NCBI RefSeq assembly: GCF_006345805.1
Contig: NC_043002.1
Location: forward strand, 45,198,001-45,262,000
From: Octopus sinensis
Taxonomy: Eukaryota
DNA: 64,000 nt
Reading direction: 5' to 3'
Below are positions 2,503 through 57,029 of this stretch, one piece after another. Below the pieces are notes generated by a model. It saw only the letters and a list, made by a program, of their open reading frames with translations, was not told where the DNA came from and searched no databases. A program made the position numbers and the translations under genes. Position 1 is the first letter of the stretch; every line of letters starts with the position of its first letter.

Positions 2503-2519
2503 AGGAATAAAAAATATTA
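2503..2519. repeat. Left TSD of the host SINE (partner at 18847-18863)
   Basis: AGGAATAAAAAATATTA vs AGGAATAGAAAATATTA, 16/17 identical, directly abutting the SINE tail on one side and the SINE head on the other. Confidence 0.8.
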
Positions 2520-2679
2520 GTTTCGAATTTTCGCACAAAGCCAGTAACTTCGGGGGTGGGGGAAGTTGATTACATTGACACGAGTGTACAACTGGAACTT
2601 ATTTCATCGACCCGAAAGAATGAAGGGCAAAGTCACCTCGGAGGAATTTGAACTCAGATCGTAAAGACGGAAGAAATGC
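2520..2679 (-). mobile_element. Host tRNA-derived SINE, body and 3' tail (older-type sequence)
   Basis: Matches the SINE body seen at 27634-27796, 38779-38940 and 45720-45880. Contains the B-box-like GAGTTCAAATTCC on the minus strand. Confidence 0.85.
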
Positions 2680-2864
2680 CTATTTCTTTATTACCCACAA
2701 GGGGCTAAACACAGAGAGGACAAACAAGGACAGACAAACGGATTAAGCCGATTACATCGACCCCAGTGCGTAACTGGTACTTAATTTATCGACCCCCGAA
2801 AGGATGAAAGGCAAAGTCGACCTCGGCGGAATTTGAACTCAGAACGTAACGGCAGACGAAATAC
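2680..2864 (-). mobile_element. Tailed SINE unit (SINE body plus Tx1-type 3' tail) inserted at site A
   Basis: Same ~185-bp unit as 28039-28222. Ends (sense) ...GTGTTTAGCCCCTTGTGGGTAATAAAGAAATAG, directly followed by GCATTTC of the host. Confidence 0.9.
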
Positions 2865-3108
2865 GAATTTCTTTATTGCCCACCGGGGGCCAAACATAGA
2901 TATGGACAGTACAACTGATGGGATCAGTGAATCGATATGATTTTACATAAATGTGACATCAAAAATAAAATACAATACATAAAAATCGAATGGAATACAC
3001 AGTACAAAAACAATACAAATGAAGCGATGATCAAGTTACGCTCCGATCCCACAAGCCCCGATCTACCGCTGATACCTTTTATTTTTCCTTTTTTTTTTCC
3101 TCGTCTAT

Positions 3109-6100: not shown

Positions 6101-6502
6101 AATGCGACGTGGCTAGGAACTTTCCTAGGCCACGAAAATATTCAGTTTGCGGGCCAATAATGTTTGGTGCATAAATAGCGACCAGCCTGATTGTCTTGCC
6201 ACAACTGAATGTCAAGTCGAGAACGACCAGCCTGCCTTCTGGGTCAGAAAAAACCAACTTTTTCTCGGCTACCCGGTTTCTTTTAGTAGGACCAACACCC
6301 CACCCCCACCTCCCGCCCGACTCGGAGAAACGTATTTCTCGTAGCCGTTCAGGAGGGGGAGCAGATCTCTTGGCCCCTTCACCCGGGTTTCCGTTGCAAC
6401 AATTACATCCAAATTTCTCGACCTGATGTCATTCAGAAAGCGTCCTTGCTTCCAGCTTGACAACAGGCCATGAACATTTAAACAACCAATGTGAATAGCC
6501 AT
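3109..6502 (-). CDS. F1 ORF2: AP endonuclease + reverse transcriptase + zf-RVT-type Cys/His motif (several frameshifts)
   Basis: APE motifs GCLNVHGL, ATETR, VAIYAPN, LGDSN (for GDFN), YLDRIL, SDHKMV. RT motifs FRPITLLNAEVKILAK, LDQSKAFDRVDH, RQGCPLSPLLY, AFADD. C-terminal CPRCG...HAIVQC. Pieced from ORFs 6269-6505, 5991-6257, 5608-6069, 4619-5662, 4092-4643, 3442-4167 and 3210-3563. Stop TGA at 3109-3111 by my manual reading. Confidence 0.9.
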
Positions 6503-6513
6503 CACTTACCTGT

Positions 6514-8034
6514 TTAATTAGGATTGTCCGGTGGAGGGGGACCCTCCACCTTTTTTTTATCCAGGGTCGGAGGTGGACGGTCTTGGGAAATAGATTTGTC
6601 AAAATCCCGTCTCACCACCGACACAGAATTATCAGGTGGAGGGGGAATCTCCACCTTTTCCTTTTCTCGCGGGATCGGAGATGGTAATCCATGAAATATC
6701 GACTTGTTAAAATCTAATCTCAATGAAGATACAGTCTTTCTGTACTTATTTTGTAGAATTCTATAAGTCTTATTTGAGACTTCATATATGTCGTAATTGA
6801 TAAATTCCTCTGAAAGGTTATCAATTTTTTTACAGTCTTTATGAGTTGAATGTCTCTCATGAGCTCAGTATCTTTAGTGTATACGGCTATTATGCCTTTT
6901 TCTTCTTTTTCTCTTCTGGCAGTCTTTTTTGGTCGTTGTTCTGTAGTAGTCGCCGCTCTCGGCTGGGTTGCTGATTGTATTTTCTTTTGTTTGTTGTTTT
7001 TTCTCATCTGTTTCTTCTTTATCTTCTTCCTCTTTGTCTTTTTTCTCCTCTTCCTCCTCTTCTTCATTTTCCTTGCAGTTCCTTCGAATGTGGCCTAATT
7101 GACCACATAAAAAACATCGAGGTTTTCGGCCCTCAACAAACACCACGAGGTTCTCCTCCCCTACCTCAATTGTCTCAGGAATTGTTTGAATTATTTTAGG
7201 GTCCGCTTGAATGAGAAGATTAATTGTTTGACCATCCCAGCGTGGGTTTTCCGTAGCGGTAGCCTGGAGGAGGAGAGTTTTTTCTACCTCTTTGATTAGG
7301 ACTGCCGCCAACAACCACATAGGTTCGACCTCTGGCGGGACCCTTGTAATTTTTATTCGCGACGTCCTCATCCCCATATAATAGGGTATTAACTCCACGT
7401 CGTTCGTTTTCAACGTTTCAACTGAGTTCTTGTGTGCTATTTCTTTATTGGTGAACCTTACTTCCACCGTTCCGAATTTTTTTCCTCTTCTCAGAAATAC
7501 TACGTCGCCCAATATTGGCTTTAAGCACTTTTCTATTTTCTCTTCTGACATTCTTTCAATTTTCTATTTTGTAGACAATATGTTTTGAAAATTATTGTTT
7601 TTTGCTTTTTTCCTGTAATAACTTTTGCGGAGGTTCAATTTTCACACTGTTGTCAGTTATTTCCATCATTTTGCTGTATTTCATAATTTCGCTTTTATTC
7701 GTCGACAGTATCTGGGTTCCACCCCCAGCAGCCAACGCAAAATTTTTTTCCATTTTTGGTTCTATCTGGATGCTAGGCACATCAATTATTCTCTTCGACA
7801 CAATGCCTTTGTTCTCTGGCAAAGTCGGAAACTCTTCTGGTGAAAGTTCTGACGAGCTCTCAGACACATCTCCAAAAATATCAAATATATTATCCTCTCT
7901 GCTATTCCTTCTTGTAGCGGGGAAACCCTATTTCCTTGTCTGTAGTTGGCTCCTCGCGCGGACATGTATTTCCTCCTCTCAACAGGAGAAACAAGTATTT
8001 CTGCTCCAACGGTAGGCTCCATGCTAGACGACAT
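6514..8034 (-). CDS. F1 ORF1: gag-like nucleic-acid-binding protein with CX2CX4HX4C knuckle (frameshifted)
   Basis: KPRCFLCGQLGHIRRNC in ORF 6874-7551, preceded by an RRM-like region (FGTVEVRF...RIKITRVPP). Flanking pieces are 7592-7867, 6720-7067 and 6514-6723. Boundaries approximate. Confidence 0.8.
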
Positions 8035-8205
8035 TCTTCCCCCCAAAGGGGGAATGAACAACGCGTGCTACCACAAGCACTAAGTGTTTTCAATTGAAAA
8101 CTCCAACAGTTAAGTTATTCAACAGTTTAACAAGAAACAACAGTTGTTAACAATATTAACACCACGAAACAGCAATTCTTACTTCACGAACACATGTGCG
8201 ACAGT

Positions 8206-8247
8206 CGAAATACGGCTACGCATTTCGCCCGGCGTGCTAACGTTTCT
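8206..8247 (-). mobile_element. Middle fragment of the host SINE head, between site A and site B
   Basis: CGAAATACGGCTACGCATTTCGCCCGGCGTGCTAACGTTTCT matches the uninterrupted heads at 27974-28030 and 28398-28455. Confidence 0.9.
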
Positions 8248-9990
8248 TATTTCTTTATTACCCACTAGGGGCGACACAGAAAGGGACACTAAGAAACATG
8301 GGGACATATAACATTATAATTAAATTTTATGAACATGAATTGTTAAACGAAAAAATGATTAAATGAAAGCGATACCAACGGCCCCGTCCGTCAGCATCAC
8401 TTACCTGTCCTTTGTTTTTCATAGTCACTTGAATGTTCTTGCCAATACGAATAAATTCCATATCCATTCTTACTCCGAAATACTCATCCATGTTTTCCAC
8501 GAATTCATCGCTCATTCTTATATCTTTCACCTCCCAATTCTTCCTTTCACACCTCCCCATAAACTCACCTATGTTCTTCTTTTCAATCACAGCATACCTA
8601 GTCTCACCAACATCATACCATTTATACTCTTCCATTAGACTTTTAACTTCTTTCTGTTCAGTCATAGTACAAATGTACGGCCTGATATCGATTTCAATCT
8701 CTTGTGTGTGTGTATTCTTTTTTTTCTTTTGTTTTCTTGTTGGGGGGGAGCGGGTGGGTTCAATGTCTGCATGGATAGGGTGGGACTCAGAGGGCGTGGG
8801 TGGTTTTGGGGTGGATTGGAGTTCCATATTATTTTTTTTCCACGTATTCTTCTCTTCCTCTTACTTCCAGCTTCCTTCCATTTCTGTGTATTCTCTTCCT
8901 CTGTTTCCTTCTCCTCTGGTTTCTGCTTCTCTCTCTCTGGTTCGGGATCCATTTCTTTCCCTGGGGGAGGGCAGAAGGCTCTTATGTGACCCCTCAGGCC
9001 ACACTTGTAACAACGTGGAGCCCTGCCCTCCACCCACACTCTCATGATCACTTCTCCCAGTCTGATGCTTTCCGTCAGGTCCACCAGTACCTCGGTCTCT
9101 GCCTGTACGTTCAGCTCCACTGTTACGCCTCTCCAGCCCTCGGACTTAACCGAGGCATGGAGAATATCACTTCGTCCTCGTGGCCGCTGATCACAGCCGC
9201 CACAATCCATTCTGCCTCCACGTTTGGTGGCACTCCCTCCACCCTTATTCGTGTAATCCTCCTGTTTAAATACGTAGGTAACAGTGTTACCTTTTCCGAC
9301 TTCACCGCCTTCGCTGCCATCTTCCTCGCTGCAGATTCACTTTTAAAATGCACAACTACGGTCCCATACTTGGATCCTCGAGTCAGAAAATTTATTTCCT
9401 CCTCAGTTCTTCGCAGGGCTTCCTCTATCCATTCCATGGTTACAACTTCTACCCTCTTCCTTTCGTTTGCGAACACCCTGTAAACAATGGTCCTCTTATC
9501 ATACCATTCTTTTCTCCTGGGTGTCGGTGATAGTTCCACCTCACCGCTTTCCTTTTTCATGTGTTTCTGGTAACTTGGTAGCTTGGCCAAGTCGACCCTT
9601 TCTCTTCCGCCTTCTTGGTTACACCGGCATAAGTATAACTCAGCTTCTTTTCCAAATTCTCGCTGCTGCCATTTCTAGCTCCTTCTCAGACAGTCTGATA
9701 AAGACTCGAAAACTCCAGCCTTTTCCTCCATCAGCTTCACTGCAATTGCCTGTTCCAGTTCCTCATCTGTCGTGGACAAGTCTGTTAGAGACTCATAGTC
9801 CATTTCCTTCTGTCTGACAGACCGAAAACGGCCGCCAAAACAGAAAAAAGTTTAACGCGCTGAACGAGCGAAACGCGAAACCGCGTCAACGCCGTTCAGA
9901 ATTTCCACAACAACAACAACGCTTTTTGTTTTTTTTTTACCGAATTTTCAGGAGCCGAAAAAAACACAACCGACGTCAAACGAAGTGTGA
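8248..9990 (-). mobile_element. ORF1-only non-autonomous Tx1 derivative NA1 (HAL1-like), 1.74 kb
   Basis: Bounded by CGTTTCT at 8241-8247 and 9991-9997. Termini shared with F2. Single gag-like ORF, no APE or RT. Confidence 0.85.
8327..9803 (-). CDS. NA1 ORF1-like protein (~490 aa consensus; frameshifted in this copy)
   Basis: Pieces 9123-9590, 8662-9210 and 8327-8827. Knuckle APRCYKCGLRGHIRAFC. ATG at 9801-9803 by alignment to NA3. Confidence 0.75.
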
Positions 9991-9997
9991 CGTTTCT

Positions 9998-11739
9998 TAT
10001 TTCTTTATTACCCACTAGGGGCGACACAGAAAGGGACACTAAGAAACATGGGGACATATAACATTATAATTAAACTTTATGAACATGAATTGTTAAACGA
10101 AAAAATGATTAAATGAAAGCGATACCAACGGCCCCGTCCGTCAGCATCACTTACCTGTCCTTTGTTTTTCATAGTCACTTGAATGTTCTTGCCAATACGA
10201 ACAAATTCCATATCCATTCTTACTCCGAAATACTCATCCATATTTTCCACGAATTCATCGCTCATTCTTATATCTTTCACCTCCCAATTCTCGCATTCAC
10301 ACATCACCATAAAGTCACCTATGTTCTTCTTTTCAATCACAGCATACCTAGTCTCACCAACATCATACCATTTATACTCTTCCATTAGACTTTTAACTTC
10401 TTTCTGTTCAGTCATAGTACAAATGTACGGCCTGATATCGATTTCAATCTCTTGTGTGTGTGTATTCTTTTTTTCTTTTGTTTCTTGTTGGGGGGAGCGG
10501 GTGGGTTCAATGTCTGCATGGATAGGGTGGGACTCAGAGGGCGTGGGTGGTTTGGGGTGGATTGGAGTTCCATATTATTTTCTTTTCCACGTATTCTTCT
10601 CTTCCTCTTACTTCCAGCTTCCTTCCATTTCTGTGTATTCTCTTCCTCTGTTTCCTTCTCCTCTGGTTTCTGCTTCTCTCTCTCTGGTTCGGGATCCATT
10701 TCTTTCCCTGGGGGAGGGCAGAAGGCTCTTATGTGACCCCTCAGGCCACACTTGTAACAACGTGGAGCCCTGCCCTCCACCCACACTCTCATGATCACTT
10801 CTCCCAGTCTGATGCTTTCCGTCAGGTCCACCAGTACCTCGGTCTCTGCCTGTACGTTCAGCTCCACTGTTACGCCTCTCCAGCCCTCGGACTTAACCGA
10901 GGCATGGAGAATATCCACTTCGTCCTCGTGGCCGCTGATCACAGCCGCCACAATCCATTCTGCCTCCACGTTTGGTGGCACTCCCTCCACCCTTATTCGT
11001 GTAATCCTCCTGTTTAAATACGTAGGTAACAGTGTTACCTTTTCCGACTTCACCGCCTTCGCTGCCATCTTCCTCGCTGCAGATTCACTTTTAAAGTGCA
11101 CAACTACGGTCCCGTACTTGGATCCTCGAGTCAGAAATTTATTTCCTCCTCAGTTCTTCGCAGGGCTTCCTCTATCCATTCCATGGATACAACTTCTACC
11201 CTCTTCCTTTCGTTTGCGCACACCCTGTAAACAATGGTCCTCTTATCATACCATTCTTTCTCCTGGGTGTCGGTGATAGTTCCACCTCACCGCTTTCCTT
11301 TTTCATGTGTTTCTGGTAACTTGGTAGCTTGGCCAAGTCGACCCTTTCTCTTCCGCCTTCTTGGTTACACCGGCATAAGTATAACTCAGCTTCTTTTCCA
11401 AATTCCTCGCTGCCATTTCTAGCTCCTTCTCAGACGTAGGCGAGTCTGATAAAGACTCGAAAACTCCAGCCTTTTCCTCCATCAGCTTCACTGCAATTGC
11501 CTGTTCCAGTTCCTCATCTGTCGTGGACAAGTCTGTTAGAGACTCATAGTCCATTTCCTTCTGTCTGACAGACCGAAAACGGCCGCCAAAACAGAAAAAA
11601 GTTTAACGCGCTGAACGAGCGAAACGCGAAACCGCGTCAACGCCGTTCAGAGTTTCCACAACAACAACCACGCTTTTTTTCTTTTTTACCGAATTTTCAG
11701 GAGCCGAAAAAACACAACCGACGTCAAACGAAGTGGTGA
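9998..11739 (-). mobile_element. ORF1-only element NA2
   Basis: Near-identical to NA1 and NA3. Bounded by CGTTTCT at 9991-9997 and 11740-11746. Confidence 0.85.
10077..11554 (-). CDS. NA2 ORF1-like protein (frameshifted)
   Basis: Pieces 11303-11554, 10412-11101 and 10077-10415. Confidence 0.75.
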
Positions 11740-11746
11740 CGTTTCT

Positions 11747-13496
11747 TATTTCTTTATTACCCACTAGGGGCGACACAGAAAGGGACACTAAGAAACATGG
11801 GGACATATAACATTATAATTAAACTTTATGAACATGAATTGTTAAACGAAAAAATGATTAAATGAAAGCGATACCAACGGCCCCGTCCGTCAGCATCACT
11901 TACCTGTCCTTTGTTTTTCATAGTCACTTGAATGTTCCTTGCCAATACGAACAAATTCCATATCCATTCTTACTCCGAAATACTCATCCATATTTCCACG
12001 AATTCATCGCTCATTCTTATATCTTTCACCTCCCAATTCTCGCATTCACACATCACCATAAAGTCACCTATTTCTTCTTTTCAATCACAGCATACCTAGT
12101 CTCACCAACATCATACCATTTATACTCTTCCATTAGACTTTTAACTTCTTTCTGTTCAGTCATAGTACAAATGTACGGCCTGATATCGATTTCAATCTCT
12201 TGTGTGTGTGTATTCTTTTTTTTCTTTTGTTTTCTTGTTGGGGGGGAGCGGGTGGGTTCAATGTCTGCATGGATAGGGTGGGACTCAGAGGGCGTGGGTG
12301 GTTTTGGGGTGGATTGGAGTTCCATATTATTTTTTTTCCACGTATTCTTCTCTTCTCTTACTTCCAGCTTCCTTCCATTTCTGTGTATTCTCTTCCTCTG
12401 TTTCCTTCTCCTCTGGTTTCTGCTTCTCTCTCTCTGGTTCGGGATCCATTTCTTTCCCTGGGGGAGGGCAGAAGGCTCTTATGTGACCCCTCAGGCCACA
12501 CTTGTAACAACGTGGAGCCCTGCCCTCCACCCACACTCTCATGATCACTTCTCCCAGTCTGATGCTTTCCGTCAGGTCCACCAGTACCTCGGTCTCTGCC
12601 TGTACGTTCAGCTCCACTGTTACGCCTCTCCAGCCCTCGGACTTAACCGAGGCATGGAGAATATCCACTTCGTCCTCGTGGCCGCTGATCACAGCCGCCA
12701 CAATCCATTCTGCCTCCACGTTTGGTGGCACTCCCTCCACCCTTATTCGTGTAATCCTCCTGTTTAAATACGTAGGTAACAGTGTTACCTTTTCCGACTT
12801 CACCGCCTTCGCTGCCATCTTCCTCGCTGCAGATTCACTTTTAAATTGCACAACTACGGTCCCGTACTTGGATCCTCGAGTCAGAAAATTTATTTCCTCC
12901 TCAGTTCTTCGCAGGGCTTCCTCTATCCATTCCATGGTTACAACTTCTACCCTCTTCCTTTCGTTTGCGAACACCCTGTAAACAATGGTCCTCTTATCAT
13001 ACCATTCTTTTCTCCTGGGTGTCGGTGATAGTTCCACCTCACCGCTTTCCTTTTTCATGTGTTTCTGGTAACTTGGTAGCTTGGCCAAGTCGACCCCTTT
13101 CTCTTCCGCCTTCTTGGTTACACCGGCATAAGTATAACTCAGCTTCTTTTCCAAATTCCTCGCTGCCATTTCTAGCTCCTTCTCAGACGTAGGCGAGTCT
13201 GATAAAGACTCGAAAACTCCAGCCTTTTCCTCCATCAGCTTCACTGCAATTGCCTGTTCCAGTTCCTCATCTGTCGTGGACAAGTCTGTTAGAGACTCAT
13301 AGTCCATTTCCTTCTGTCTGACAGACCGAAAACGGCCGCCAAAACAGAAAAAAGTTTAACGCGCTGAACGAGCGAAACGCGAAACCGCGTTAACGCCGTT
13401 CAGAATTTCCACAACAACAACCACGCTTTTTGTTCTTTTTTACCGAATTTTCAGGAGCCGAAAAAAAAACACAACCGACGTCAAACGAAGTGGTGC
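11747..13496 (-). mobile_element. ORF1-only element NA3
   Basis: Bounded by CGTTTCT at 11740-11746 and 13497-13503. Confidence 0.85.
11826..13307 (-). CDS. NA3 ORF1-like protein (326 aa uninterrupted, then frameshifted C-terminal part)
   Basis: ORF 12327-13307 (MDYESLTDLS...CYKCGLRGHIRAFC...) continues in 12068-12325 and on to the stop at 11826-11828, homologous to the stops in NA1 and NA2. Confidence 0.8.
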
Positions 13497-13707
13497 CGTT
13501 TCTGATTTCTTTATTACCCACTAGGGGCGACATAGAGAATACACACAAGACGAATGATGAAAAAAAAATATTATGAACGTTTGGGGTCGAAATGAATAAA
13601 AATCGAATGATTATACAATAGACACAACAAAATACACAAGAGCAGGGGCGGGTTCGCGACCCCATGCCCCCGCCACGACACTTAGCCTTGTGGTTTTCTT
13701 TTTCTTC

Positions 13708-16700
13708 CTATCTCACATTTGTGAGGGATCTTTTACTCTGCACATTTTTCCATCTTTCATAAAACACTTTCTTACTCAGGCTCCTTCTCTCCAGTCTATT
13801 GTCTTTTCAGGTGGAATTTAAAATATTCCACCAGACTTGAACCAGAGATGAAGTCGCCTGTTATCATTCCTTTCATCCTTGTCTTCCATACTGCCTGTTT
13901 CGCAGTTGAAACCACGGCGAGAGAAAACAAACTTACCTTCTTTCGTTAAGAAATCAGGTGGGCTGATTTTTACAATAGATTCGGCTGATAGCTGTACTCT
14001 TCGTTCACCTGACATTAGTTGTTCGGCACAATCCCACATATCTTTCACCCCCGAACACTGCACGATCGCGTGCGAGACGGTTTCCCGTTCTCGCCCACAC
14101 CTCGTACAGGTCGGGCTGACTTGGCAACCGTGCCTTGCAAGCTTGTCCCGAACAGGTAAGGCTCCTCGGTAGCACTGCCAAGCCAAGACTTCTGGAAATT
14201 GTCCAGTGTCTTCGGCCCAAATGTACTTTGGAACAGACTGGCCAGCTGATTATCGTCGAAACCTAGGCTTCCCCCAGCGTATCATCGTTACCGGCCTCTA
14301 CAAACCCTCTATAAAAACAGCGGTAGAACCACTGCCACAGGCATTACCGAGCGACGGAATAGTCGGAGTGCCTGCGACACTCCGTATACCACGTGCCCAC
14401 TTCGATCTGCGATTATACCAGGCCTCCCGGCCACCGAAACTGGTGAACCTGGGGAACATCTGTTTCGCCAGCGGAGACCACACCCGTTCACTACCCAGAT
14501 GGAGCCACAGGTGCCTTAGCCTCAGCGCATTTCTGCGCATCATTAGCCACGGCATCCCTAGTCCACCTGTAACGGTTTTGACAGCAGACAGAGCGTCTCA
14601 CAAGCGGTTTCGATCCCTTCCACAAGAAGCGAAAGAGCTGTCTCTCCAACTTGATCAACCACGAATCCGGGCAAGGCACGACGGCAAGGCGGTAGGTGAT
14701 CACCGATGCTATAAACACATTGGCCACCTCCGCCCTACCTTTCAAGGATAACCACCGGCAAGACCAAATCTTGACTATTGCAGCCACCTTGCTCGATACC
14801 TCGCTCCAGTTCTTCTCTATTTGGAGGTCCGGACCGAACCAGACCCCGAGCAACTTAATCGGGCCCTCCGTCCAACGTCCCACGACGCTGTCTGGAGGCA
14901 TCGACTTGCCTCTCCAGGTGCCGAGTTGCAAGCCGACCGACTTTTCACGATTAACTTTTGCTCCTGTCACCGTCTCGTAACCTCTATGGCCTTGCCTACT
15001 TTACGTAGGTGGTCCACTTCAGTCACGATGATAGTGATGTCATCCGCGTACGCCGAAACCGACATATCACGTCCTGGTTGCCTCGGGATGCCGCTCAGTC
15101 TTCGCAGCAGCGGCTCCAGGGCCACTACATACAAAAGCGGGGAGAGCGCGACATCCCTGGCGAACCGAGCGTTTGACCTTGAACGGCTTAGAAAGAAAGC
15201 CGTTCACCTGAACTACCGAGTCGGCGTTGTCATACATTTCGATGATCCACCTGAGGAAGCAAGACCCAGGCCGAACTGAGCCAGAACGGACACCAGGTAG
15301 TGATGGTCGACCCTATCGAACGCTTTAGACTGGTCTAAATGGACCACTGCCCCTCCCTTGCCGAGATCGTTATTTATTCCCTCTATCGTGTATCTAATTA
15401 GATGGAGATTATCCTGAATGGCTCTGCCCGGTACGGCGCACGTTTGCGCTTTCCCAATCAGTCCATTCGCGACACGCGCCAATCTGTTCGATAACACTTT
15501 GGCCAAAATCTTCAACTCTGCGTAAGCAGAGTGATGGGCCTGAAATTATCTATTACGTCCCCCTTGCTCTGGTCCTTCCTGATTAGCGTCACCACTCCCC
15601 GGCGCACAGATCTGGGGATAAACCCATTCTGCTGCCAGTTTGCGTAGACGCCCGTCAGTAAGTCCCCGAACAAGTCCGGCATACTTTTATAAAGCTCGTA
15701 TGGTAGACCATCCAGTCCCGGCGCCTTACCTGCACCGCAGTCCGCCATGGCCTCTATTACCTCCCCAGGTGTGATCGGCTCCTCACTACACTTCGCATCC
15801 TGCCCGAGAGGCGCGGCAGCCCGTCGAGGGGGTCCGTAAGGTCCCTCCCCTATCCGGTCCGCCGCTCCCCCCGAAAAGCTGGGCGAAGTGGTCCTGAAAA
15901 GCTTGACACATCTCCTCGGGCTCGTCTGTCAACATACCTTGTTGGTTCGCCAGAGATCGAATTGTAGCATCATTGCCACGTTGGGCTTCCACCACTCGGG
16001 CCCATCCTGCAGCCTTGATTCCTTCGCTCCCCATCGCACGTTGTCTAGCCCTGACAATGCAACCCATGTGTTGGGCTTCGAGGTGCTGGTAAGAACCAGT
16101 CTCTTGACCTTCACCTGGTCTGCATTGCCAGTTCGCATTGCTTCCTCTAAGTCCTTAACTAGTGCAGTTACCCTTCTAGCCTCTCTAGCTACATGGTTAG
16201 TACTATATCTAACGGACTCATATTTTATGGCTCGCTTAAGGGCATACCACCATTTGTTGTTACAAATGGAGCCGGTCATGGCCCTCTGGATTATTAACCT
16301 AATCCTGTCCCTGTACTCCTTAATCGCCAAAAGGGACGTATTAAGTTTCCAGTAACCAGGACCTCTAGTTATCTTATCTACGTCTAGCCTACAGGTGACC
16401 ATCTTGTGGTCACTGTAGCTGACTATATGGAGTTGTGGACTCTTAACTAGGTTCTTATCTACCTTCCTAATTAATATCCTGTCTATATACGACTTTGCCG
16501 ATCCGTCGCTATTTGACCACGTCCACAGTGGAGCGCCCGGATGTTCCAGTCTATATGGATCTACCAGCTCAAAACGTCTTAGTAGATCCAGGAAGCAAGT
16601 ATTTCCTTTTCTGTCTGTTCGCGAGCCTTCACAGTCTACCCGCACATCGCAGATTGTGTTGAAGTCCCCTAACATTACTACTGGGCACGATGTACTCAGA

Positions 16701-17087
16701 AACTTCTCCAGGTTCCGATAATAATCACTTTTCCCCTTATTGGGGGGAGCGTAAACCGCAACCAGCCTGATTGTCTTACGGCTACTGAACGTCAACTCAA
16801 CGACGACCAGCCTACCTTCCGGATCCGTAAAAATCAACTTTTTCTCAGAAAACCCGGTTCTTTTTACACAGGACCAACACCCCGCTTCCGCTGACCGACG
16901 GGTTCGGAGAGATGACACTCTCGTAACCGCCGAACAGCGGGAGCAGATCTCTTGGCCCCTTTAACCGGGTTTCTGTGGCAACGACAACATCTAAATCCCG
17001 TGACCTGATGTCATTTAGGAAGCGCCTTGCTTCCAGCTCTGCATCAGGCCACGCACATTCAAAACACCCTACACGAATATGAGACAT
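13708..17087 (-). CDS. F2 ORF2: AP endonuclease + reverse transcriptase + zinc finger (frameshifted)
   Basis: VAVYAPP, LGDFN, YIDRIL, SDHKMV, FRPITLL, LDQSKAFDRVDH, AYADD (read across a frameshift near 15040-15050), CTRCGRERETVSHAIVQC. ORF pieces 16845-17087, 15929-16918, 15786-16067, 15512-15748, 15213-15515, 14491-14970, 14298-14555 and 13818-14186. Stop near 13708 by manual reading. Confidence 0.9.
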
Positions 17088-17096
17088 TACTTACCT

Positions 17097-18594
17097 TTAT
17101 TCCGTGGTCGTGGCGGGGAAGTCCACATTAATCAGTGACTTGTCCACTCCGAGTCGCGGACCCTTTATGTCCCCTGCGAAGTGCATTTAACATGTTAAAG
17201 TTCCGTAAGTCCAATTTATAAATTTCTACATTTTTTTGTAAGATTTCTGTGGGTTTTCACCCTTTCTGCGCTTGGGATATTTCCCATTCCACTTTTAAGT
17301 CGGTCATTATTTTTGTCTATTGCCGCATATACTATTGGGCTTCTGTAAATCTGCTTTTTTGTGGGCTTTGGGGGGTGATGGGGAGGACCCCGGGGTGAGT
17401 ATGATGGGGGGAACACGAGGGGGGGTTGAAAGGAGGGGTAATGCTCGGCACTGAGGGGTGGGGGTGGATTGGGTGGGGGCTTCTCTTTTTGTGGGGAACC
17501 GTGGTTGGGTGGGGATGGTTTTCCCCCTGGGAGTTGGACTTCTTTTTGATTGTGCCGGGTTGGTTGGGCCTATGTCCGCGTTTTTCCTTTTTGGCGTTTT
17601 CTTCCGCTCACCGTTGTGAAGTCGTCCTCTTCCTCCGTTTCTTCTCCGCCTCCTCTTCCGTCTTTTTCCTTCTTCTTCCTTCTTGCTGGTGGGGCATTCC
17701 ATACGGATGTGACCTATCTCGCCCAATCCGTAGCAACGTGGCTTTCGCCCCTCCACCACCACCCGCAAGTTAATCTCTTCCCGAACTGAATACCTTCTGG
17801 AACCTCCTCCATTGCCTCCGGGGTCGCTTGCACCACCACGTGCAACGCTTGTCCTCTCCAATTTTCTTTTATTACTCTTCTGATGTTTATTACTGTTTTT
17901 TTCTTCCAGCCCCATTAACAGTGCTGGAAGCAACCACCTCACGTCGACCTGTGGCGGCACGTCCTCCACTCTGATTTTTGAGGTTCTCCTTCCTAAATAC
18001 GAGGGTAATAAAATTATTTCCTCCGTCTTTATTGGTGTTAAGGAGTGTTTTTTTGCTGTTTCTTCATCTCTGAATTGTACCTCTATGGTTGCGAACTTTC
18101 TCCCCCACGTCACGTAATCCATATCGCTCCACACTAGTTTCAGGCATTTCTCCGCCTGGTCTTTGGTTATTCTTTCAATTCTCTTCTCTTTTATCACAAA
18201 ATATTTTAAATTATCGTTCTTTCTCGGTTTCCTCTTTGATTGTTTGTGGGAGGGCAGCTATCGCGTTATTTCCTTCTTTTTTAAACATTTTTTTAAACTT
18301 TTCGTATTCAACCTCCTCCATCTTTACTTCCTCTGTCTTCCTACCAGCAGCGGCAGCGAAGTTGAACATCTTGGTTTTTTCACTTGGTACATTTGCTGTT
18401 TTCACAGTTTCATCGGAAGTCACACCTTCCGTAACTTATCCGTTTTCGTAGCCTTTTTAATCGGCGAACCTTCATTCGCTTTTGCTGTTTTCACAAGCTT
18501 CCTTGGAAGTCGTGTCTTCCGCAATTTTTTCTTCTTCCGCAATTTTCATATTTTTTTGTGTAGGTAAACCTACTATTTCATCATTTTTTGACAT
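17097..18594 (-). CDS. F2 ORF1: gag-like protein, knuckle missing its second Cys (frameshifted)
   Basis: ORF 17307-18197 aligns to F1 ORF1 (EKCLK..., VEGRKPRC). Knuckle reads CYGLGEIGHIRMEC. N-terminal pieces 18211-18423 and 18472-18669. Boundaries approximate. Confidence 0.78.
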
Positions 18595-18827
18595 TTTTGG
18601 ACAAATGTGTGTGTTTTTTTCGTGTATTTTAATGTGCAGCAGTTCCCCTCCGTGAGGAGGGGAAAACAAAGTTTTCCTGGTTCAAAACCAGCAACAGTTC
18701 AAACAATTTTTTAAACAAGACAATTAAAACAGGTTTTAACATAAACACAACTATTCACTTTTTGTTCCTTTCCACCGAACTCTCAGGAGCCGAAAAAAAA
18801 CACAACCGACGTCAAACGAAGTGGTGC

Positions 18828-18846
18828 CGTTTCTGCCAGCTCGCCG
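18828..18846 (-). mobile_element. 5' end of the host SINE head (A-box region)
   Basis: CGTTTCTGCCAGCTCGCCG, followed by the right TSD at 18847-18863. Confidence 0.85.
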
Positions 18847-19243
18847 AGGAATAGAAAATATTAACGCTGCTTATTTTGCATAACAGAGGAGATCGATATG
18901 TTATCACTAAATGCTACAATAATTTTGGATAGGTAAAATTATTGTCTGAAGATATAAACGATAATATTTGTCATCTTACTTGCAGCATCTCGGTATTTTT
19001 CTTTGTCTTAGACACCGGATCCGTGAACTCCAGGCGTTGAGAAAGCAGGGTTTCAATTTACCCTCTTAAATCACGTTGTTAAGGCCTCATTCACTACCCA
19101 ACCTTTTCTAACACCTCCTCCGACATGCACACCATACACACACACGCATACACACACACACATACATACATACACATGGAACAATCGTAAACAATCACCT
19201 TCATTACTCCCTTAGGTTTATTTCTCTTCTCGATAACAACTTG

Positions 19244-27085: not shown

Positions 27086-27633
27086 CAATTTATTGAACCA
27101 GGACTGATTCTAATTCACGCACAAGGCCAGCATTTTTAGGAATAGAGGCTTAGTCACTTAAATCGACACCAGTACTTGACTGCTGCTCTATTTTATCAAG
27201 CCCGAAAGGATGAAAGAAAACGTTAGCCTTTGCGGATCATCAGTCTAGAAAACCGAAACAAATGGATGCAAGCTATTTTGTCTGATGCTTAAAGATTCTA
27301 ATAATCTACGGCTCCTAATTATAAGTAGTTATAGGCTTATACATTCAAGACTTGTTGAAAGGGTACTACTGTCATTAAAGAAGTAAATATGTTTGAACTG
27401 GGAAAGAAACAGTATCGCGGACCCATTGTGTTAAAACTTAGTGTGACACTACGACGATTATATCGTGTTATAAATATACTTTCTGGAGTTTTTGATTTTG
27501 CCTATCTTATAATATAGCAAATGGGTGTAATTCTATGTTACACTATACTGCATTTTTTTTTCCTGTACTCAAATAAGCATGAAACCTAATCTAAATACTA
27601 TTAGAAATAGCCCAAAAGGTTAGTTCTAATAAT

Positions 27634-28457
27634 CTTTTCTAATATAGGCACAAGGTATGAAATTTGTGGGGAGCGGGTAAGTTGATCAGATCGACACTGC
27701 TACTTAACTGTACTTAATTTATCGACCCCGAAAGAATGAAAGGCAACATTGACCTCGGCGGAATTTGAACTCAGAATGTAGAAACGAGTAAAATACCTAT
27801 TTCTTTACTACCCACAAGGGGCTAAACACAGAGAGGACAAACAAGGACAGACAAACGGATTAAGTTGATTACATTGACCCCAGTGCGTACCTGGTACTTA
27901 TTTAATCGACCCCGAAAGGATGAAAGGCAAAGTCGACCTCGGCGGAATTTGAACTCAGAACGTAGCGGCAGACGAAATACCGCTAAGCATTTCGCCCGGC
28001 GTGCTAACGTTTCCGCCAGCTCGCCGCCTTTGAAATACCTATTTCTTTACTACCCACAAGGGGCTAAACACAGAGAGGACAAACAAGGACAGACAAACGG
28101 ATTAAATCGATTATATCGACCCCAGTGCGTAACTGGTACTTATTTAATCGACACCGAAAGGATGAAAGGCAAAGTCGACCTCGCCGGAATTTGAACTCAG
28201 AACGTAGCGGCAGACAAAATACCTATTTCTTTACTACCCACAAGGGGCTAAACACAGAGGGAACAAACAAGGACAGACAAACGGATTAAGTCGATTATAT
28301 CGACTCCAGTGCGTAACTGGTGCTTAATTTATCGACCATGAAAGGATGAAAGGCAAGGTTGACCTCGGCGAATTTGAACTCAGAACGTAGCGGCAGACGA
28401 AATACCGCTGAGCATTTCGTCCGGCGTGCTAACGTTGCTGCCAGCTCGCCGCCTTAT
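27634..28457 (-). mobile_element. Host SINE containing three nested tailed-SINE insertions at site A
   Basis: Host body 27634-27796. Full-length tailed SINE 27797-28030 followed by TGAAATAC. Units at 28039-28222 and 28223-28455 (the latter with head). Outer TSD GGTTAGTTCTAATAAT (27618-27633) / GGTTAGATCTAATGAT (28458-28473), 14/16. Confidence 0.88.
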
Positions 28458-29127
28458 GGTTAGATCTAATGATACTTCCACATCTTTTCCAATGGCATAC
28501 TGTTGGTTTCAAACTAGAAGTGAAACCTACTTGCATACTCGGCTCATCAAGAGCCTGCTGCCAGACTATGTACCCTTTTATTATAGCTTTAAAAATCTTC
28601 AACAAGTACATGCATTGAGTAAAGAAAATAAATGATAGATTACATAAATAATAGAGCAGTAGGCTGGTGTTGCCACGTAAAGTTATAGGCTGGTGATGCC
28701 ACATAAATCATAAAATATTTGAAGCTGAGAGATAATAAGAAATTTTTATCCCTGCAGGTAAATGTAATTTATAGCCTATTTCAATCTATTGAAGAAATTT
28801 TGTAAGTTCAGTTGAAACAATATTAACATCTGCTACAACACTATTCATAATACATTTATGAGATTAAAAGTGCATGTATTACGGTTCAGTTTACTGCGTA
28901 TTCGTACAGGGAGAGAAAGATCATCTACGACATCTCACGTGATTAAATTGAACCTTTCGTATTTATTCAGAAAAAAAAAGATTACATGCTAAACTAAAAT
29001 TACTTATGAGAGTTATCCAAACAATCCTTCGGTGTTTCTATATATGTTAATTATTATATATCCTTTCATCAAACAAACATGATCGAGTGTTTTCTAGAAA
29101 TGGTTAACTTTTCTTCTTCTCCAACCA

Positions 29128-29305
29128 TACAAGAAGGTGCTGAAAATTTCCTGACCTTGAGTAAAAGAAAATACATGAAGATCAGTTAATTATGATTTTC
29201 TTCAAACATATTCCACCTCTCAGATCCACACACTTCATTTTTTCTAAGTCCTGTAAAATAAGTCGGAGGATTGGGCCTTTCACGAGGAACTTAGCAGCAT
29301 CCCCT

Positions 29306-29310
<5 letters not shown>
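29128..29310. mobile_element. Tc1/mariner-type MITE (family also at 30070-30292 and 44385-44604)
   Basis: TIR-like ...GGTGCTGAAAA(T/G)TTCCTG and ...GAAC.T.CAGCA.CCC with TA flanks; shared internal sequence among three copies. Confidence 0.65.
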
Positions 29311-29344
<34 letters not shown>

Positions 29345-29509
29345 TTGCGAATTGTTTTGTTATACGGTGGCATATTTTACAATCCTGTAAATAATAATAA
29401 TGGTATTTTTATATATGCTTAAAGTTTTTGGCGATCACCGTGCAATGGCTAAGAAAAGCAGTCTAATAACGGGGCATATAAGCCCTCGACAGAAAAAAAG
29501 AAGGCTTTC

Positions 29510-29578
29510 CTATCCGCGTGGGACTCGAATCCACATCCCTTTGTTAACGCGGCTGTGTTACCTTTACACCAGCGAACC
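29510..29578 (-). pseudogene. tRNA-like sequence (tRNA pseudogene or isolated SINE head; 5' half resembles tRNA-Gln)
   Basis: Sense GGTTCGCTGGTGTAAAGGTAACAC...GGATTCGAGTCCCAC has A- and B-box-like motifs; no convincing cloverleaf. Confidence 0.4.
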
Positions 29579-29650
29579 AGCCTCCCGTCTTCTGTCAAAT
29601 TTAAGAACATATTTGTTTTTTATGTAAACAAACTTTCCCTTTATGCTTTC

Positions 29651-29880
29651 GGTGCGAATGTGGCAGACACGTTAGCGCGCCGGGCGAAATGCTTAGCGGT
29701 ATTTCGTCTGTCGTTACGTTCTGAGTTCAAATTCCGCCGAGGTCAACTTTGCCTTTCAACCTTTCGGGGTCGATAAATAAAGTACCAGTTTCGCACTGGG
29801 AGCGATATAATCGACTCAATCCCTTCGTCTGTCCTTGTTTGTCCCCTCTATGTTTAGCCCCTTCTGGGCAGTAAAGAAAT
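29651..29880 (+). mobile_element. Stand-alone tailed SINE (not nested in another SINE)
   Basis: Head, body and ...TGTTTAGCCCCTTCTGGGCAGTAAAGAAAT tail; followed by ATATATGG rather than GTATTTC. Confidence 0.85.
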
Positions 29881-29984
29881 ATATATGGTGCCGTATTTTA
29901 CAATCCAATAAATAATAATTATAATGGCATTTTCATATAAGCTTAAAGCTTATGGCGATCACCGTACATATATATATATATGTA

Positions 29985-30028
<44 letters not shown>

Positions 30029-37795: not shown

Positions 37796-38544
37796 TTGTG
37801 CGTGCGCACGCGTGTATGTGTGCATGTGTGTGTGTTTCATTTTCATCTCAACTATGATAATTATAAAACCGAAGTACCCAGCTTTCAGTTGAATTCCAAA
37901 TACTTTACCTGGCTTCAAAGGGTACGCCATCTTCAAAGGTGTAACTTTGAAAGGATCGGGATTTTATTTGCTTGTTTGTTTCCTTTTTTTTTCCACAATA
38001 CCGTAGCATTTCAATCTGTTACTTCAAACGGTGATTTTTAAGATACCAAAATTTGGAGTTCGTTTTTATTGTTCGTGATATACTTACGTTAACATATAGA
38101 AAGCATTCTTATTTTTTGGAAGGATTATCAACTATTATCTAAGTTATTTTACTTGATTCACTATCATAGTCTATGTAAAAAATTTAAGCCTTCCACTTGT
38201 CTATACTATGGTGGTGACTTATTTTATCTGCATCTTCTATTGTTGTTAAAATACAAAATGCACTGGAATCAGTTCTACTTGCTTTTGCTTGTAGATATTA
38301 GTGTATTATTAGGTCAAATTTCCCTTACTGCATTGCTTATTGCTCCCCTTAGCTCAGTAGGTACTTAAGAATGACAATGAGAGAAAAGGAGATAGATATA
38401 TCTTGAAAGATTTACTGAGAATGTTATGCATACTACTAATTTATGCTCATTTCAGAGAAAGTAGCACGAGATAAATTGACTGAAAAAGAAAGCTTTGTAG
38501 ACTTGTTGTTGTACGTGTTTATGAGAGAATATTTTCCTTTCAGT

Positions 38545-38940
38545 AAGGCTGCGAGCTGGCAGAAACGTTAGCACGCCGGGTGAAATGCTTAGCAGTATTT
38601 CGTCTGCCACTACGTTCTGAGTTCAAATTCCGCCGAGATCGACTTTGCCTTTCATCCTTTTGGGGTCGATTAAATAAGTACCAGTTACGCACTGGGGTCG
38701 ATATAATCGACTTAATCCGTTTGTCTGCCCTTGTTTGTCCTCTCTGTGTTTAGCCCCATGTGGGTAGTAACGAAATCGGTATTTCATCTGTCTTTATGTT
38801 CTGAATTCAAATTCTGCCGAGGTCGACTTTGCCTTTCATCCTTTCGGGTTCGATAAATAAAGTACCAGTTGCATACTAGGTTCGATCTAATCGACTGGCC
38901 CCCTCCCCCAAAATTTCGGGCCTTGTGCCTAGAGTAGAAA
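38545..38940 (+). mobile_element. Composite SINE: head + tailed unit + base-type body, with 19-bp TSD
   Basis: Tail ...GTGGGTAGTAACGAAATCG (ends 38778) is directly followed by GTATTTCATCTG. Perfect TSD AGAATATTTTCCTTTCAGT at 38526-38544 and 38941-38959. Confidence 0.88.
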
Positions 38941-39307
38941 AGAATATTTTCCTTTCAGTTGCATAAAGGATATTTGTGAATAATGCAACACTAAACCATA
39001 TATTTGTGTAATACTCAATGTGAAGCTTCCTTGAGTACTTTCTCTTTTATGCTATTTATTAGATGCAATACGAACGCACACACAAATACATTTGTATGTG
39101 TGTATGCATATATGCATGCATACACACAGATACACACATACACACATATATAAATGCATACATAAACGAGCACAAGTATTATTCAATGATTCAATGTTTT
39201 TAGACAAGTGTCTTATTCACAGATACAATGCAACGCCTTTGGCAGGATGCGAACCTTTAGTTTCCTGAATATTTGTTTTTTACCCTTCGATTGACCCATC
39301 TGCTCTA

Positions 39308-55940: not shown

Positions 55941-56245
55941 AAGCAATGAGTAAATAGTGTTATACACATACACAGAGTGAGAGAGAAATATACAAAGAAA
56001 AAGAAGGGAGGAAGAAAATGACATAGTTGTTAGAGTGTGAGAGAGAGAGACAGAGAGAGAGATAGAATGAAAGTATAACAGTTCAGAACAATACGATAAA
56101 ACGTAAAAATATAGTAAAAATAAAGGTTATAAACGAAATAGAGAGAGAAGACCTGAAAGAGAAGGGACTGGACAGAGGAGAGGGAGTTGGGGAGATGGTG
56201 ATAAGGAGAGGGATAGACAGAGAAGGGAAAGCAGTCATGTATAAA

Positions 56246-57027: not shown

Positions 57028-57029
57028 AT

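What the first reader, a model, noticed from the sequence alone, without database searches (positions are those of the whole stretch)
27618..28473. A SINE that swapped tails and now inserts into its own family (self-targeting arrays)
Seen: base-type SINEs end in a ...GGCCTTGTGCC-type tail and carry long TSDs (17 bp at 2503/18847, 16 bp at 27618/28458, 19 bp at 38526/38941). The tailed variant shares head and body up to ...GATATAATCGAC and then switches to the Tx1-type tail. Five of six tailed units in the window (2680, 27797, 28039, 28223, 38545-38778) are immediately followed by GTATTT/GCATTT of another SINE. The full-length copy 27797-28030 is bracketed by AAATAC on both sides, matching the F1 site. 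Inference: capture of the F1 tail moved this SINE to a different, site-specific LINE, and because it contains the target itself it builds chains.
Basis: partly seen in the sequence, partly recalled or inferred. Interest (0 to 1): 0.78.

Follow-up and report, generated by a model that had tools for sequence, protein, structure and literature searches.

The report
Octopus SINE chains at its own head
In this octopus-type genome window, a short mobile element took its tail from a LINE and is repeatedly joined, tail first, to one fixed motif inside other copies of its own family, building 184-base head-to-tail chains; this is a self-directed variant of a known SINE/LINE targeting scheme, supported by only three loci.

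Summary
27618-28473 is one base-type SINE (16-bp TSD, 14/16) carrying three tailed units on the minus strand. Every tailed unit of one subfamily (T-b, 5 of 5 at three loci) ends ...AAAGAAATA and is joined to GGTATTT at position ~50 of a SINE head. An L1/Tx1-like LINE (2865-8197) uses the same junction.

The tail swap is real. The last ~38 nt match the 3' ends of two LINE families in the window at 28-34/38. Chain units are no more alike within a chain than between loci, and the three resident base parts are only 74-79% identical. That argues against local duplication and against a fixed dimer.

- Three of eight tailed copies stand alone, including both copies found in 115 kb of Octopus bimaculoides, one with an ordinary 14-bp TSD.
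- The lone copies form a separate subfamily (T-a), whose O. bimaculoides member L003 has the tail closest to the LINE (34/38).
- None of 25 candidate sites in O. bimaculoides is occupied.
- One-step template-switch chimeras are not excluded.
- The Tx1 clade was not tested beyond L1-likeness.

The closest precedent is crocodilian SINEU/Tx1-Mar. I rate this a new variant of a known kind, of moderate interest.

The parts
28458..28473 (.). TSD copy at the 5' side of the composite (SINE orientation): ggttagatctaatgat
   Evidence: Matches 27618-27633 at 14/16.
28223..28457 (-). Unit C: full-length tailed SINE of subfamily T-b. 28456-28457 is 'AT' filler; the head carries GGTATTTCG at position ~50; the tail ends ...AAAGAAATAG at 28223.
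   Evidence: 91.9% identical to unit A over 234 nt.
28039..28222 (-). Unit B: 184-nt T-b module running from position 51 (GTATTTT) to the tail. It has no head. Its first bases form a T4 run directly after unit C's tail.
   Evidence: TRF period 184. TTTT at unit position 4.
28031..28038 (-). GTATTTCA: upstream copy of the 8-bp target duplication of unit A.
   Evidence: Matches GTATTTTA at 27789-27796 at 7/8. The eighth base is A as in the resident base part, not G as in the T-b consensus.
27797..28030 (-). Unit A: full-length T-b SINE (234 nt) with its own head.
27634..27796 (-). 3' part of the resident base-type SINE, from position 51 (GTATTTTACTCG...) to the tail ...CCTTGTGCCTATATTAGAAAAG.
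   Evidence: Only 74-81% identical to other base parts.
27618..27633 (.). TSD copy at the 3' side of the composite: ggttagttctaataat
38526..38959 (+). Second composite: 19-bp TSD (38526-38544), T-b unit (38545-38778), base-type part from GTATTTCATC (38779-38940), then 19-bp TSD (38941-38959).
   Evidence: TSD 19/19.
2503..2864 (-). 3' side of the third composite: 17-bp TSD (2503-2519), base-type part from GCATTTC (2520-2679), and a 185-nt T-b module from GTATTTC to the tail (2680-2864).
2865..8197 (-). LINE1: degenerate L1/Tx1-like LINE (ORF1 zinc knuckle, RT). Its 3' end ...GGGCAATAAAGAAATT is joined to CGTATTTCG of a SINE. About 17-bp TSD: CGTATTTCGACTGTCGC (8198-8214) versus CGTATTTCGTCTGCCGT (2849-2865).
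8198..8246 (-). SINE head positions 18-66, left between the LINE2-type array and LINE1.
8247..13502 (-). Three 1.75-kb non-autonomous elements (U1-U3), 98.7-99.5% identical. They share only ~70 nt at the 5' end and ~32 nt at the 3' end with LINE2. Each is preceded by (A)GAAACG of the SINE head (position ~18).
13503..18828 (-). LINE2: second L1/Tx1-like LINE family (APE endonuclease hit; 76% identical to LINE1 over 3.3 kb). Its tail ...GGGTAATAAAGAAATC is joined to AGAAACG.
18829..18863 (-). SINE head positions ~5-20 (18829-18846) and the 17-bp TSD (18847-18863) closing the third composite.
29651..29882 (+). Lone tailed copy of subfamily T-a. Its tail ...GGGCAGTAAAGAAATAT is followed by ATATGGTGCCGTATTTTAC.

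Best explanation
The window carries an octopod SINE family with a Pol III-type head (box-B-like GTTCAAATTCC) in two tail forms. The derived form (T) kept the head and body of a young base subfamily. It replaced the last ~50 nt with ~67 nt whose terminal ~38 nt (TCTRTGT..GCCCC..GTGGGYARTAAAGAAATA) are the 3' end of an L1/Tx1-like LINE group; two families of that group lie in the same window.

One T subfamily (T-b) is copied by target-primed reverse transcription preferentially at a nick just after ...TAGC and before GGTATTTCG, at position ~50 of SINE heads. LINE1 uses the same junction. A sister LINE family (LINE2 and its 1.75-kb non-autonomous derivatives) uses a second head site, ...TGGC|AGAAACG.

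The array 27618-28473 is one resident base-type SINE (16-bp TSD) that received three T-b copies in succession. Each incoming copy carries the same motif and head as the resident. Its 5' junction is therefore resolved inside that homology, and the net gain is a precise 184-nt 'position 51 to tail' module (units B and C, 2680, 38545). Where the upstream neighbour is a tail and not a head (unit A), the copy stays full length and is flanked by an 8-bp duplication, GTATTTYA. Every insertion regenerates the motif at its 3' junction and brings another one in its own head, so chains can grow.

Shown: the tail homology, the junction identity, the independence of the three loci, and the TSDs. Inferred: the order of events, the homology-guided 5' resolution, and the endonuclease as the source of specificity.
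For: 1. Junctions: 5 of 5 T-b tails and LINE1 abut G[TC]ATTT at SINE position 51, and 4 of 4 LINE2-type tails abut GAAACG at position 18. The chance of at least 5 of 6 at position 51 is ~6e-20.
2. LINE1 shows a ~17-bp duplication (14/17). Both copies share a private C before GTATTT.
3. Unit A has an 8-bp duplication (7/8) whose eighth base matches the resident base part, not the T-b consensus.
4. The nest at 2503-18863 is 16 kb inside one 17-bp TSD. The LINE entries at these two head sites must therefore be later insertions.
5. T-b identity within the chain (A-B 95.7, A-C 91.9, B-C 91.8) equals identity between loci (A-2680 95.1, A-38545 94.0, B-2680 94.1). The resident base parts are 74-79% identical to each other.
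6. Tail homology is 28-34/38 and stops there.
7. The LINE ORFs carry RVT_1, Exo_endo_phos and zf-CCHC domains, and their best solved relative is human L1 ORF2p.
8. Precedent: Tx1-Mar and SINEU share targets in a transposon, different Tx1 families use different positions in it, and tandem SINEU-3 copies sandwich a TSD (PMC4494074).
Against: - Only three loci in one 64-kb window support it.
- The three lone T copies (all subfamily T-a) are not at the site, and one has a normal 14-bp TSD.
- The single tail closest to LINE1 belongs to a lone T-a copy (L003, 34/38), not to T-b.
- None of ~25 sites is occupied in 115 kb of O. bimaculoides.
- LINE1's use of the site is one case, and no further LINE copies could be found.
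- All chains lie inside a long base-type TSD and end with a base tail, which a one-step chimera would also produce.
- The heads in front of the chains are of the young type even where the resident base part is divergent. This needs either conversion by the incoming copy or a one-step origin.
- No empty site was available.
Confidence: 0.55

Rival explanations
1. One-step chimeras. The machinery of the base-type SINE's own LINE starts on a base SINE RNA. It leaves that template at position ~51 and continues on the 3' end of a T-b RNA that ends in ...AAAUAGGUAUUU(U), once or several times. The whole composite is then inserted in one event with one long TSD.
For: All three chains lie inside a single long TSD (16-19 bp) and end with a base-type tail. 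The heads at the 5' end are of the young T-b type, not the type expected of the divergent resident parts. Complementarity between the cDNA end (..AAATACC) and a read-through T-b RNA end would favour the jump. B starts with GTATTTT, a T4 run that could end unit C's transcript. LINE RTs are known to make chimeric insertions with other RNAs (abstract of 10.1101/2025.02.02.635956).
Against: There is no reason for the RT to leave a template at position 51 in four or more independent cases. LINE1 (TSD ~17 bp) and the LINE2/U array cannot be part of a one-step event, yet they use precise head sites, one of them the same site. The eighth base of the GTATTTCA copy matches the local resident sequence, as a TSD would. 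Three jumps in a single event are required for 27618-28473.
Confidence: 0.2
2. The specificity comes from the RNA, not from the endonuclease. T-b source copies sit in front of GGTATTT(T), so their transcripts read a few bases into the target. That 3' extension pairs with the nicked bottom strand (..AAATACC-3') of any SINE head and homes the copy there. T-a sources lie elsewhere, so T-a copies disperse. This is a variant of the best explanation and does not exclude it.
For: Chain-forming and lone copies are separate subfamilies even though their tails are nearly the same. Units A, C and 2680 contain no TTTT, so Pol III would run past the tail. Two of five T-b units are followed by GTATTTT. The tail carries AATAAA/AGTAAA about 12 nt before its end, so Pol II LINE transcripts would also be cut inside the flank.
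Against: A nick at that exact place is still needed. No transcript ends are known. Two of three lone T-a copies have G[TC]ATTT within 20 nt downstream (P~0.002, post hoc), which hints at protein recognition of the motif.
Confidence: 0.25
3. The array arose locally by tandem duplication or unequal crossing-over of a 184-bp unit after a single founding junction.
For: The 184-bp period is regular. U1-U3 in the other nest are 98.7-99.5% identical and could be duplicates.
Against: A, B and C are no closer to each other (91.8-95.7%) than to units at 2680 and 38545 (90.2-95.1%), and they share no private mutations. Unit A is full length with its own head and a TSD, which a 184-bp duplication cannot produce. 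The same junction exists at three loci with different residents.
Confidence: 0.07
4. A fixed dimeric or trimeric SINE (T unit plus base 3' part) retrotransposes as one element using the base tail.
For: The composites are flanked by long TSDs, and 38526-38959 looks like a clean dimer.
Against: The base parts of the three composites are 74-79% identical and have different tails, while the T-b units are 90-96% identical. The composites therefore do not descend from one master. Unit number also differs between loci (1, 1 and 3).
Confidence: 0.05

Closest known systems
SINEU families and Tx1-Mar LINEs of crocodilians (Kojima 2015, PMC4494074)
   Same: A SINE and Tx1-type LINEs share a target preference inside another repeat. 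Different LINE families prefer different positions of that repeat. Tandem SINE copies sandwiching a TSD arise by successive insertion.
   Different: There the target is a Mariner DNA transposon, not the SINE itself. SINEU heads derive from snRNA. No homology-collapsed periodic modules are described. Here the target lies in the SINE's own head, so each insertion adds new targets.
Tx1L in Tx1D, and other target-specific Tx1-clade LINEs such as Keno, Kibi and Koshi (as summarised in PMC4494074)
   Same: APE-type LINEs with precise target sequences located in repeats, and tandem occupancy of one site.
   Different: Their targets are DNA transposons, snRNA or 5S genes and microsatellites. A SINE head as target was not found in the literature searched. 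Clade membership of the LINEs here was not tested.
R2 SIDEs: non-autonomous derivatives of site-specific R2 in rDNA (PMC3414825)
   Same: Short non-autonomous elements keep the 3' end of a site-specific LINE and inherit its site. U1-U3 here are of that kind for LINE2.
   Different: R2 has a restriction-like endonuclease and a single rDNA site. SIDEs are internal deletions of the LINE, whereas T-b is a Pol III-type SINE with a swapped tail.
Module or tail exchange among SINE families (for example mollusc SINEs, PMC4758252)
   Same: The same head and body are combined with a different LINE-derived tail, with the switch at a discrete point.
   Different: Tail exchange alone does not produce self-directed insertion.
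Self-nesting or array-forming non-LTR elements: Zepp of Chlorella, HeT-A/TART of Drosophila telomeres (from my own knowledge, not checked here)
   Same: Head-to-tail arrays are built by repeated retrotransposition onto earlier copies.
   Different: Those are LINEs that add to ends or poly(A) tails. They are not a SINE entering a defined internal motif of its family.

Membership tests
LINE-dependent SINE (Pol III head plus LINE-derived tail) | The 3' tail is homologous to the 3' end of a LINE in the same genome. | tested here: met
   The last 38 nt match at 28-34/38 to LINE1, LINE2 and U tails; the upstream part matches at random level.
LINE-dependent SINE (Pol III head plus LINE-derived tail) | Copies are flanked by target-site duplications. 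| tested here: met
   Lone L003 copy 13/14; unit A 7/8; base-type composites 16/17, 14/16 and 19/19.
LINE-dependent SINE (Pol III head plus LINE-derived tail) | The head derives from tRNA and carries internal A and B boxes. | tested here: inconclusive
   A box-B-like GTTCAAATTCC sits at position 77. ARAGORN finds no tRNA in the window and Rfam gives no tRNA match in 27400-30000.
Tx1 clade of non-LTR retrotransposons | APE-type endonuclease plus an L1-like RT in ORF2. | tested here: met
   Pfam RVT_1, Exo_endo_phos and Exo_endo_phos_2. Best solved relatives are L1 ORF2p (6.8e-21) against R2 (2e-9).
Tx1 clade of non-LTR retrotransposons | Placement within Tx1, rather than L1 proper, in an RT phylogeny. 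| not tested
   No named Tx1 reference sequences were available. The closest database hit is an unnamed Argonauta hians protein at 47% identity. An O. vulgaris repeat annotation does list recently active L1-Tx1 families (PMC13282606).
Sequence-specific LINE/SINE partnership | Independent insertions have their 3' end at the same target sequence. | tested here: met
   Met for T-b (5 of 5 at three loci), LINE1 (1) and LINE2/U (4 at one locus). Not met by subfamily T-a (0 of 3).
Sequence-specific LINE/SINE partnership | Most genomic copies occupy the target, and empty and filled alleles exist. | not testable with these tools
   The SINE 20-mer is absent from all three DNA collections. Only 115 kb of O. 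bimaculoides could be fetched, and 0 of 25 sites there are occupied.
Sequence-specific LINE/SINE partnership | The endonuclease cleaves the target sequence specifically. | not testable with these tools
   Needs biochemistry. Both LINE copies here are degenerate.

The most novel reading that the evidence does not exclude
A SINE lineage has become self-homing. Its transcripts read a few bases into the family's own head motif, and this guides target-primed reverse transcription back to that motif in any family member. The result is precise 184-bp modules added one after another, which would be a retrotransposition route from dispersed SINE to satellite-like array. The partner LINE group, meanwhile, has radiated onto at least two positions of the head of the SINE that parasitises it.
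Probability: 0.25. Interest if true: 0.7.

Novelty: new variant of a known kind. Interest (0 to 1): 0.5.

Why it matters
If it holds genome-wide, several things follow.

- It would show a SINE and its LINE partners using the SINE family itself as a safe landing site. That reduces harm to the host. It also sets up an unusual three-way relation: the LINE targets the SINE, the SINE borrows the LINE, and the SINE targets itself.
- It would give a concrete, testable route by which retrotransposition, rather than unequal crossing-over, creates regular tandem arrays from a dispersed repeat.
- Octopus genomes are reported to be about 12% SINE, with recently active L1-Tx1 families (PMC13282606).
- Such chains will be fragmented or mis-assigned by standard repeat annotation, and they inflate 'unclassified SINE' family counts.

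If it does not hold, the locus is simply a nest of ordinary SINE and LINE insertions.

Tried and rejected
- Exact-pattern scans for a conserved SINE 20-mer in genome contigs, viral contigs and metagenome contigs found nothing.
- Loci around LINE relatives (L001 from Argonauta hians, L002 from an ENA assembly) contain neither the SINE nor the tail. They were useless for testing targets.
- Searching the protein database with SINE-derived peptides gave two usable O. bimaculoides loci, L003 and L004. Two further hits were not on record.
- tblastn with the window's LINE ORFs found no other copies in L003, L004 or the rest of the window.
- ARAGORN and Rfam did not recognise the head as tRNA.
- The tail hairpin predicted by RNAalifold (GCCC-N5-GGGY) has no compensatory changes, so it says nothing either way.
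- No host exon was found in the window that could anchor an orthologous comparison.
- Rejected, local duplication: the identity matrix shows no within-chain excess.
- Rejected, fixed dimer: the base parts are too divergent from each other.
- Considered and dropped: a base part inserted after the T unit. The long TSD encloses the T head, so this does not fit.
- Considered and dropped: LINE1 plus the 2680 unit as one element. The sequence upstream of LINE1 resembles the T-b target (13/16) more than the base-type one (10/16).
Full report
**What the region is.** The window is AT-rich eukaryotic DNA full of microsatellites and SINEs. The closest relative of its LINE reverse transcriptase is a protein of the octopod Argonauta hians (47% identity). 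SINE-derived peptides hit only Octopus bimaculoides proteins, and the SINE family recurs in O. bimaculoides DNA (L003 and L004). The source is therefore an octopod; the species is not known.

**Anatomy of 27618-28473**. Read on the minus strand, 5' to 3', the region contains:
- TSD, 28473-28458.
- 'AT' filler, then full-length tailed unit C, 28455-28223.
- Unit B, 28222-28039. It starts at SINE position 51 (GTATTTT) and has no head.
- GTATTTCA, 28038-28031.
- Full-length unit A, 28030-27797.
- The 3' part of a base-type SINE, from position 51 (GTATTTTACTCG...) to ...CCTTGTGCCTATATTAGAAAAG, 27796-27634.
- TSD, 27633-27618.

The two TSD copies match at 14/16. TRF reports a 184-bp period.

**The other two loci have the same logic.**
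- 38526-38959: 19/19 TSD, T unit, then a base part starting at GTATTTCATC.
- 2503-18863: a 16-kb nest inside a 16/17 TSD. It holds head 5-20, LINE2, three 1.75-kb elements (U3 to U1), head 18-66, LINE1, a 185-nt T module and a base part starting at GCATTTC.

All are correct (details in the observation check). The alignment of eight tailed and six base copies shows a shared head and body up to ...GATNTAATCGAC, followed by two unrelated tails. The tail motif occurs 11 times in the window. Five SINE units and LINE1 are followed by G[TC]ATTT of SINE position 51. Four LINE2-type tails are followed by GAAACG of SINE position 18. One SINE (29651-29882) is followed by unrelated DNA. Chance is negligible (P ~6e-20).

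**The tail and the LINEs.**
- Tail homology: the last 38 nt of the T tail match LINE1, LINE2 and U tails at 28-34/38. Further upstream the match is at random level. The shared piece contains a predicted small hairpin (no covariation) and an AATAAA/AGTAAA about 12 nt from the end.
- LINE1 (2865-8197) and LINE2 (13503-18828) are degenerate. They are 76% identical over 3.3 kb and unrelated in their first 1.7 kb.
- Their ORFs carry zf-CCHC, Exo_endo_phos and RVT_1. The best solved relative is human L1 ORF2p, at 6.8e-21 against 2e-9 for R2. That places them in the L1/Tx1 group. The Tx1 clade itself was not tested.
- U1-U3 share only their ends with LINE2. They are non-autonomous riders of that family.

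**Exact junctions, read directly from the sequence.** If the tail is taken to end ...TAAAGAAAT[A/T/C], then:
- T-b and LINE1 enter after ...TAGC and before GGTATTTCG. In the unit hit by LINE1 the motif reads CGTATTTCG, and this private C is present in both copies of its ~17-bp duplication.
- LINE2-type elements enter after ...TGGC and before AGAAACG, with a 7-bp duplication.

Two related LINE families thus use two precise positions of one SINE head. This mirrors Tx1-Mar families using two positions of Mariner-N4_AMi (PMC4494074).

**Independent events or copies of one event?**
- T-b units are as similar between loci (A-2680 95.1%, A-38545 94.0%, B-2680 94.1%) as within the chain (A-B 95.7%, A-C 91.9%, B-C 91.8%).
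- Polymorphic positions (GATTAAATAAG versus GATAAATTAAG; GATGTAATC versus GATATAATC) are distributed across loci, not by chain.
- The three resident base parts are 74-79% identical and have different tails.

The junction therefore arose at least three times on different residents. This rejects a fixed dimer and local duplication.

**Evidence for insertion at the site.**
- The 16-kb nest cannot be one retrotransposition event, so the LINE entries at head positions ~18 and ~50 came later.
- LINE1 has a 14/17 duplication.
- Unit A has GTATTTCA upstream and GTATTTTA downstream. The eighth base (A) is that of the resident base part and not of the T-b consensus (G), as expected of a duplicated target.

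**Why the modules are 184 nt (inference).** After the bottom-strand nick and cDNA synthesis, the upstream top-strand end carries the motif and the following bases. These are also present inside the cDNA of the incoming copy. Annealing there, or between the two heads, yields one head, no visible TSD and a net addition of 'position 51 to tail'. Unit A had a tail and not a head upstream, and it kept its full length. This fits all six junctions but was not tested.

One oddity remains. The heads in front of the chains are of the young type (GAAACG, CGAAATGC). The same head type is seen in a young base subfamily of O. bimaculoides (L003 66209-65995). They are of this type even where the resident base part is divergent. 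Conversion by the incoming copy would explain it, and so would a one-step origin.

- Tailed copies fall into two subfamilies. T-b (CTCTGTGTTTAGCCCCTTGTGGGTAGTAAAGAAATAG) is 5 of 5 in chains. T-a (CTCTATGTTTAGCCCCCTGTGGGCAATAAAGAAATAA) is 3 of 3 lone.
- The lone copies are window 29651, L003 40606-40897 (13/14 TSD of 14 bp at a non-SINE site) and L004 4612-4860.
- The copy whose tail is closest to LINE1 is a T-a copy (L003, 34/38; the other T-a copies score 30-31/38, like T-b).
- In 115 kb of O. bimaculoides there are ~25 intact head sites, none of them occupied, against 5 of 13 in the window (Fisher p=0.0026). T-b activity is therefore lineage- or region-specific, and the tail alone does not confer the site.
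- Two of the three lone copies do have G[TC]ATTT within 20 nt downstream (P~0.002, post hoc).

**Rivals.**
- One-step chimeras by template switching would also give one long TSD, a terminal base tail and young heads. They do not explain the fixed exit at position 51, the LINE entries or unit A's local TSD (confidence 0.2).
- A variant of the main model places the specificity in read-through RNA. Units A, C and 2680 contain no TTTT, and two of five T-b units are followed by GTATTTT. Transcripts could therefore end in GGUAUUU(U), which pairs with the nicked bottom strand in the right geometry for priming.
- Local duplication and a fixed dimer are disfavoured, as shown above.

**Comparison with the known.**
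- A SINE sharing the target of Tx1-type LINEs, different LINE families using different positions, and tandem copies formed by successive insertion are all described for SINEU/Tx1-Mar (PMC4494074).
- Tail exchange among SINEs is commonplace (PMC4758252).
- Non-autonomous riders of site-specific LINEs are known (R2 SIDEs, PMC3414825).
- In six literature searches I did not find a target lying in the SINE's own head, the resulting self-propagating chains of precise sub-unit length, or LINEs specialised on a SINE head. The held library omits Repbase Reports and many subscription journals, so prior description cannot be excluded.

**Verdict.** I rate it a new variant of a known kind, interest 0.5. 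The limits are three loci, no empty sites, and a negative sample from O. bimaculoides.

Noticed in passing
window 8247-18846 (minus strand): A second site-specific series. LINE2 and three near-identical 1.75-kb non-autonomous elements (U1-U3) lie head to tail, each separated by (A)GAAACG of SINE head position ~18. U1-U3 share only ~70 nt (5') and ~32 nt (3') with LINE2 and have no Pfam hits.
   Followed up: partly
L003 69622-69700, L004 32663-32760, L003 4398-4480: In O. bimaculoides, base-type tails (...GTAGAAAAGAAT) are directly followed by SINE heads that start at about position 13-25. In two cases the join is at the head's AGAAT|CG, which overlaps the tail's own ...AGAAT. Tail-to-head-interior junctions with microhomology therefore also occur for the ordinary SINE form.
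   Followed up: partly
window 27797-27796 junction and equivalents (for example 28223/28222, 38778/38779): Tail plus target forms a near-palindrome, AGAAATA-GG-TATTTCG. The last six tail bases are the reverse complement of the target's TATTTC. LINE1's junction (GAAAT-TCGT-ATTTC) is similar; LINE2's is not.
   Followed up: no
L004 4861-4890 (minus strand, just upstream of the lone T-a copy): The 5' flank contains TTTCTTTATTG, the reverse complement of the tail's CAATAAAGAAA, followed by GGTAAGAAATC, which resembles the tail end. This may be a target-like or tail-derived remnant. It is unexplained.
   Followed up: no
L003 40785-40797: A run of N (assembly gap) interrupts the lone T-a copy, with ~50 nt of the SINE repeated on both sides. 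It is an assembly artefact, not a biological duplication.
   Followed up: yes
window 19693-19732; L003 69678-69700: Short interstitial (TTAGGG)n runs. The one in L003 sits inside a SINE head fragment at the ...GCTTAG... position. The one in the window lies in unrelated DNA.
   Followed up: partly
window 56245-57028: A 343-bp tandem repeat, 2.3 copies at 97% identity, containing (ATAT/ATGT) microsatellites.
   Followed up: no
window 29651-29882 flanks: The pre-insertion site of the lone T-a copy, reconstructed as ...TTTATGCTTTCGGTGCCGTATTTTAC..., resembles the SINE head around the target (AAATGCTTAGCGGTATTTCG). The wider flanks show no SINE similarity.
   Followed up: partly
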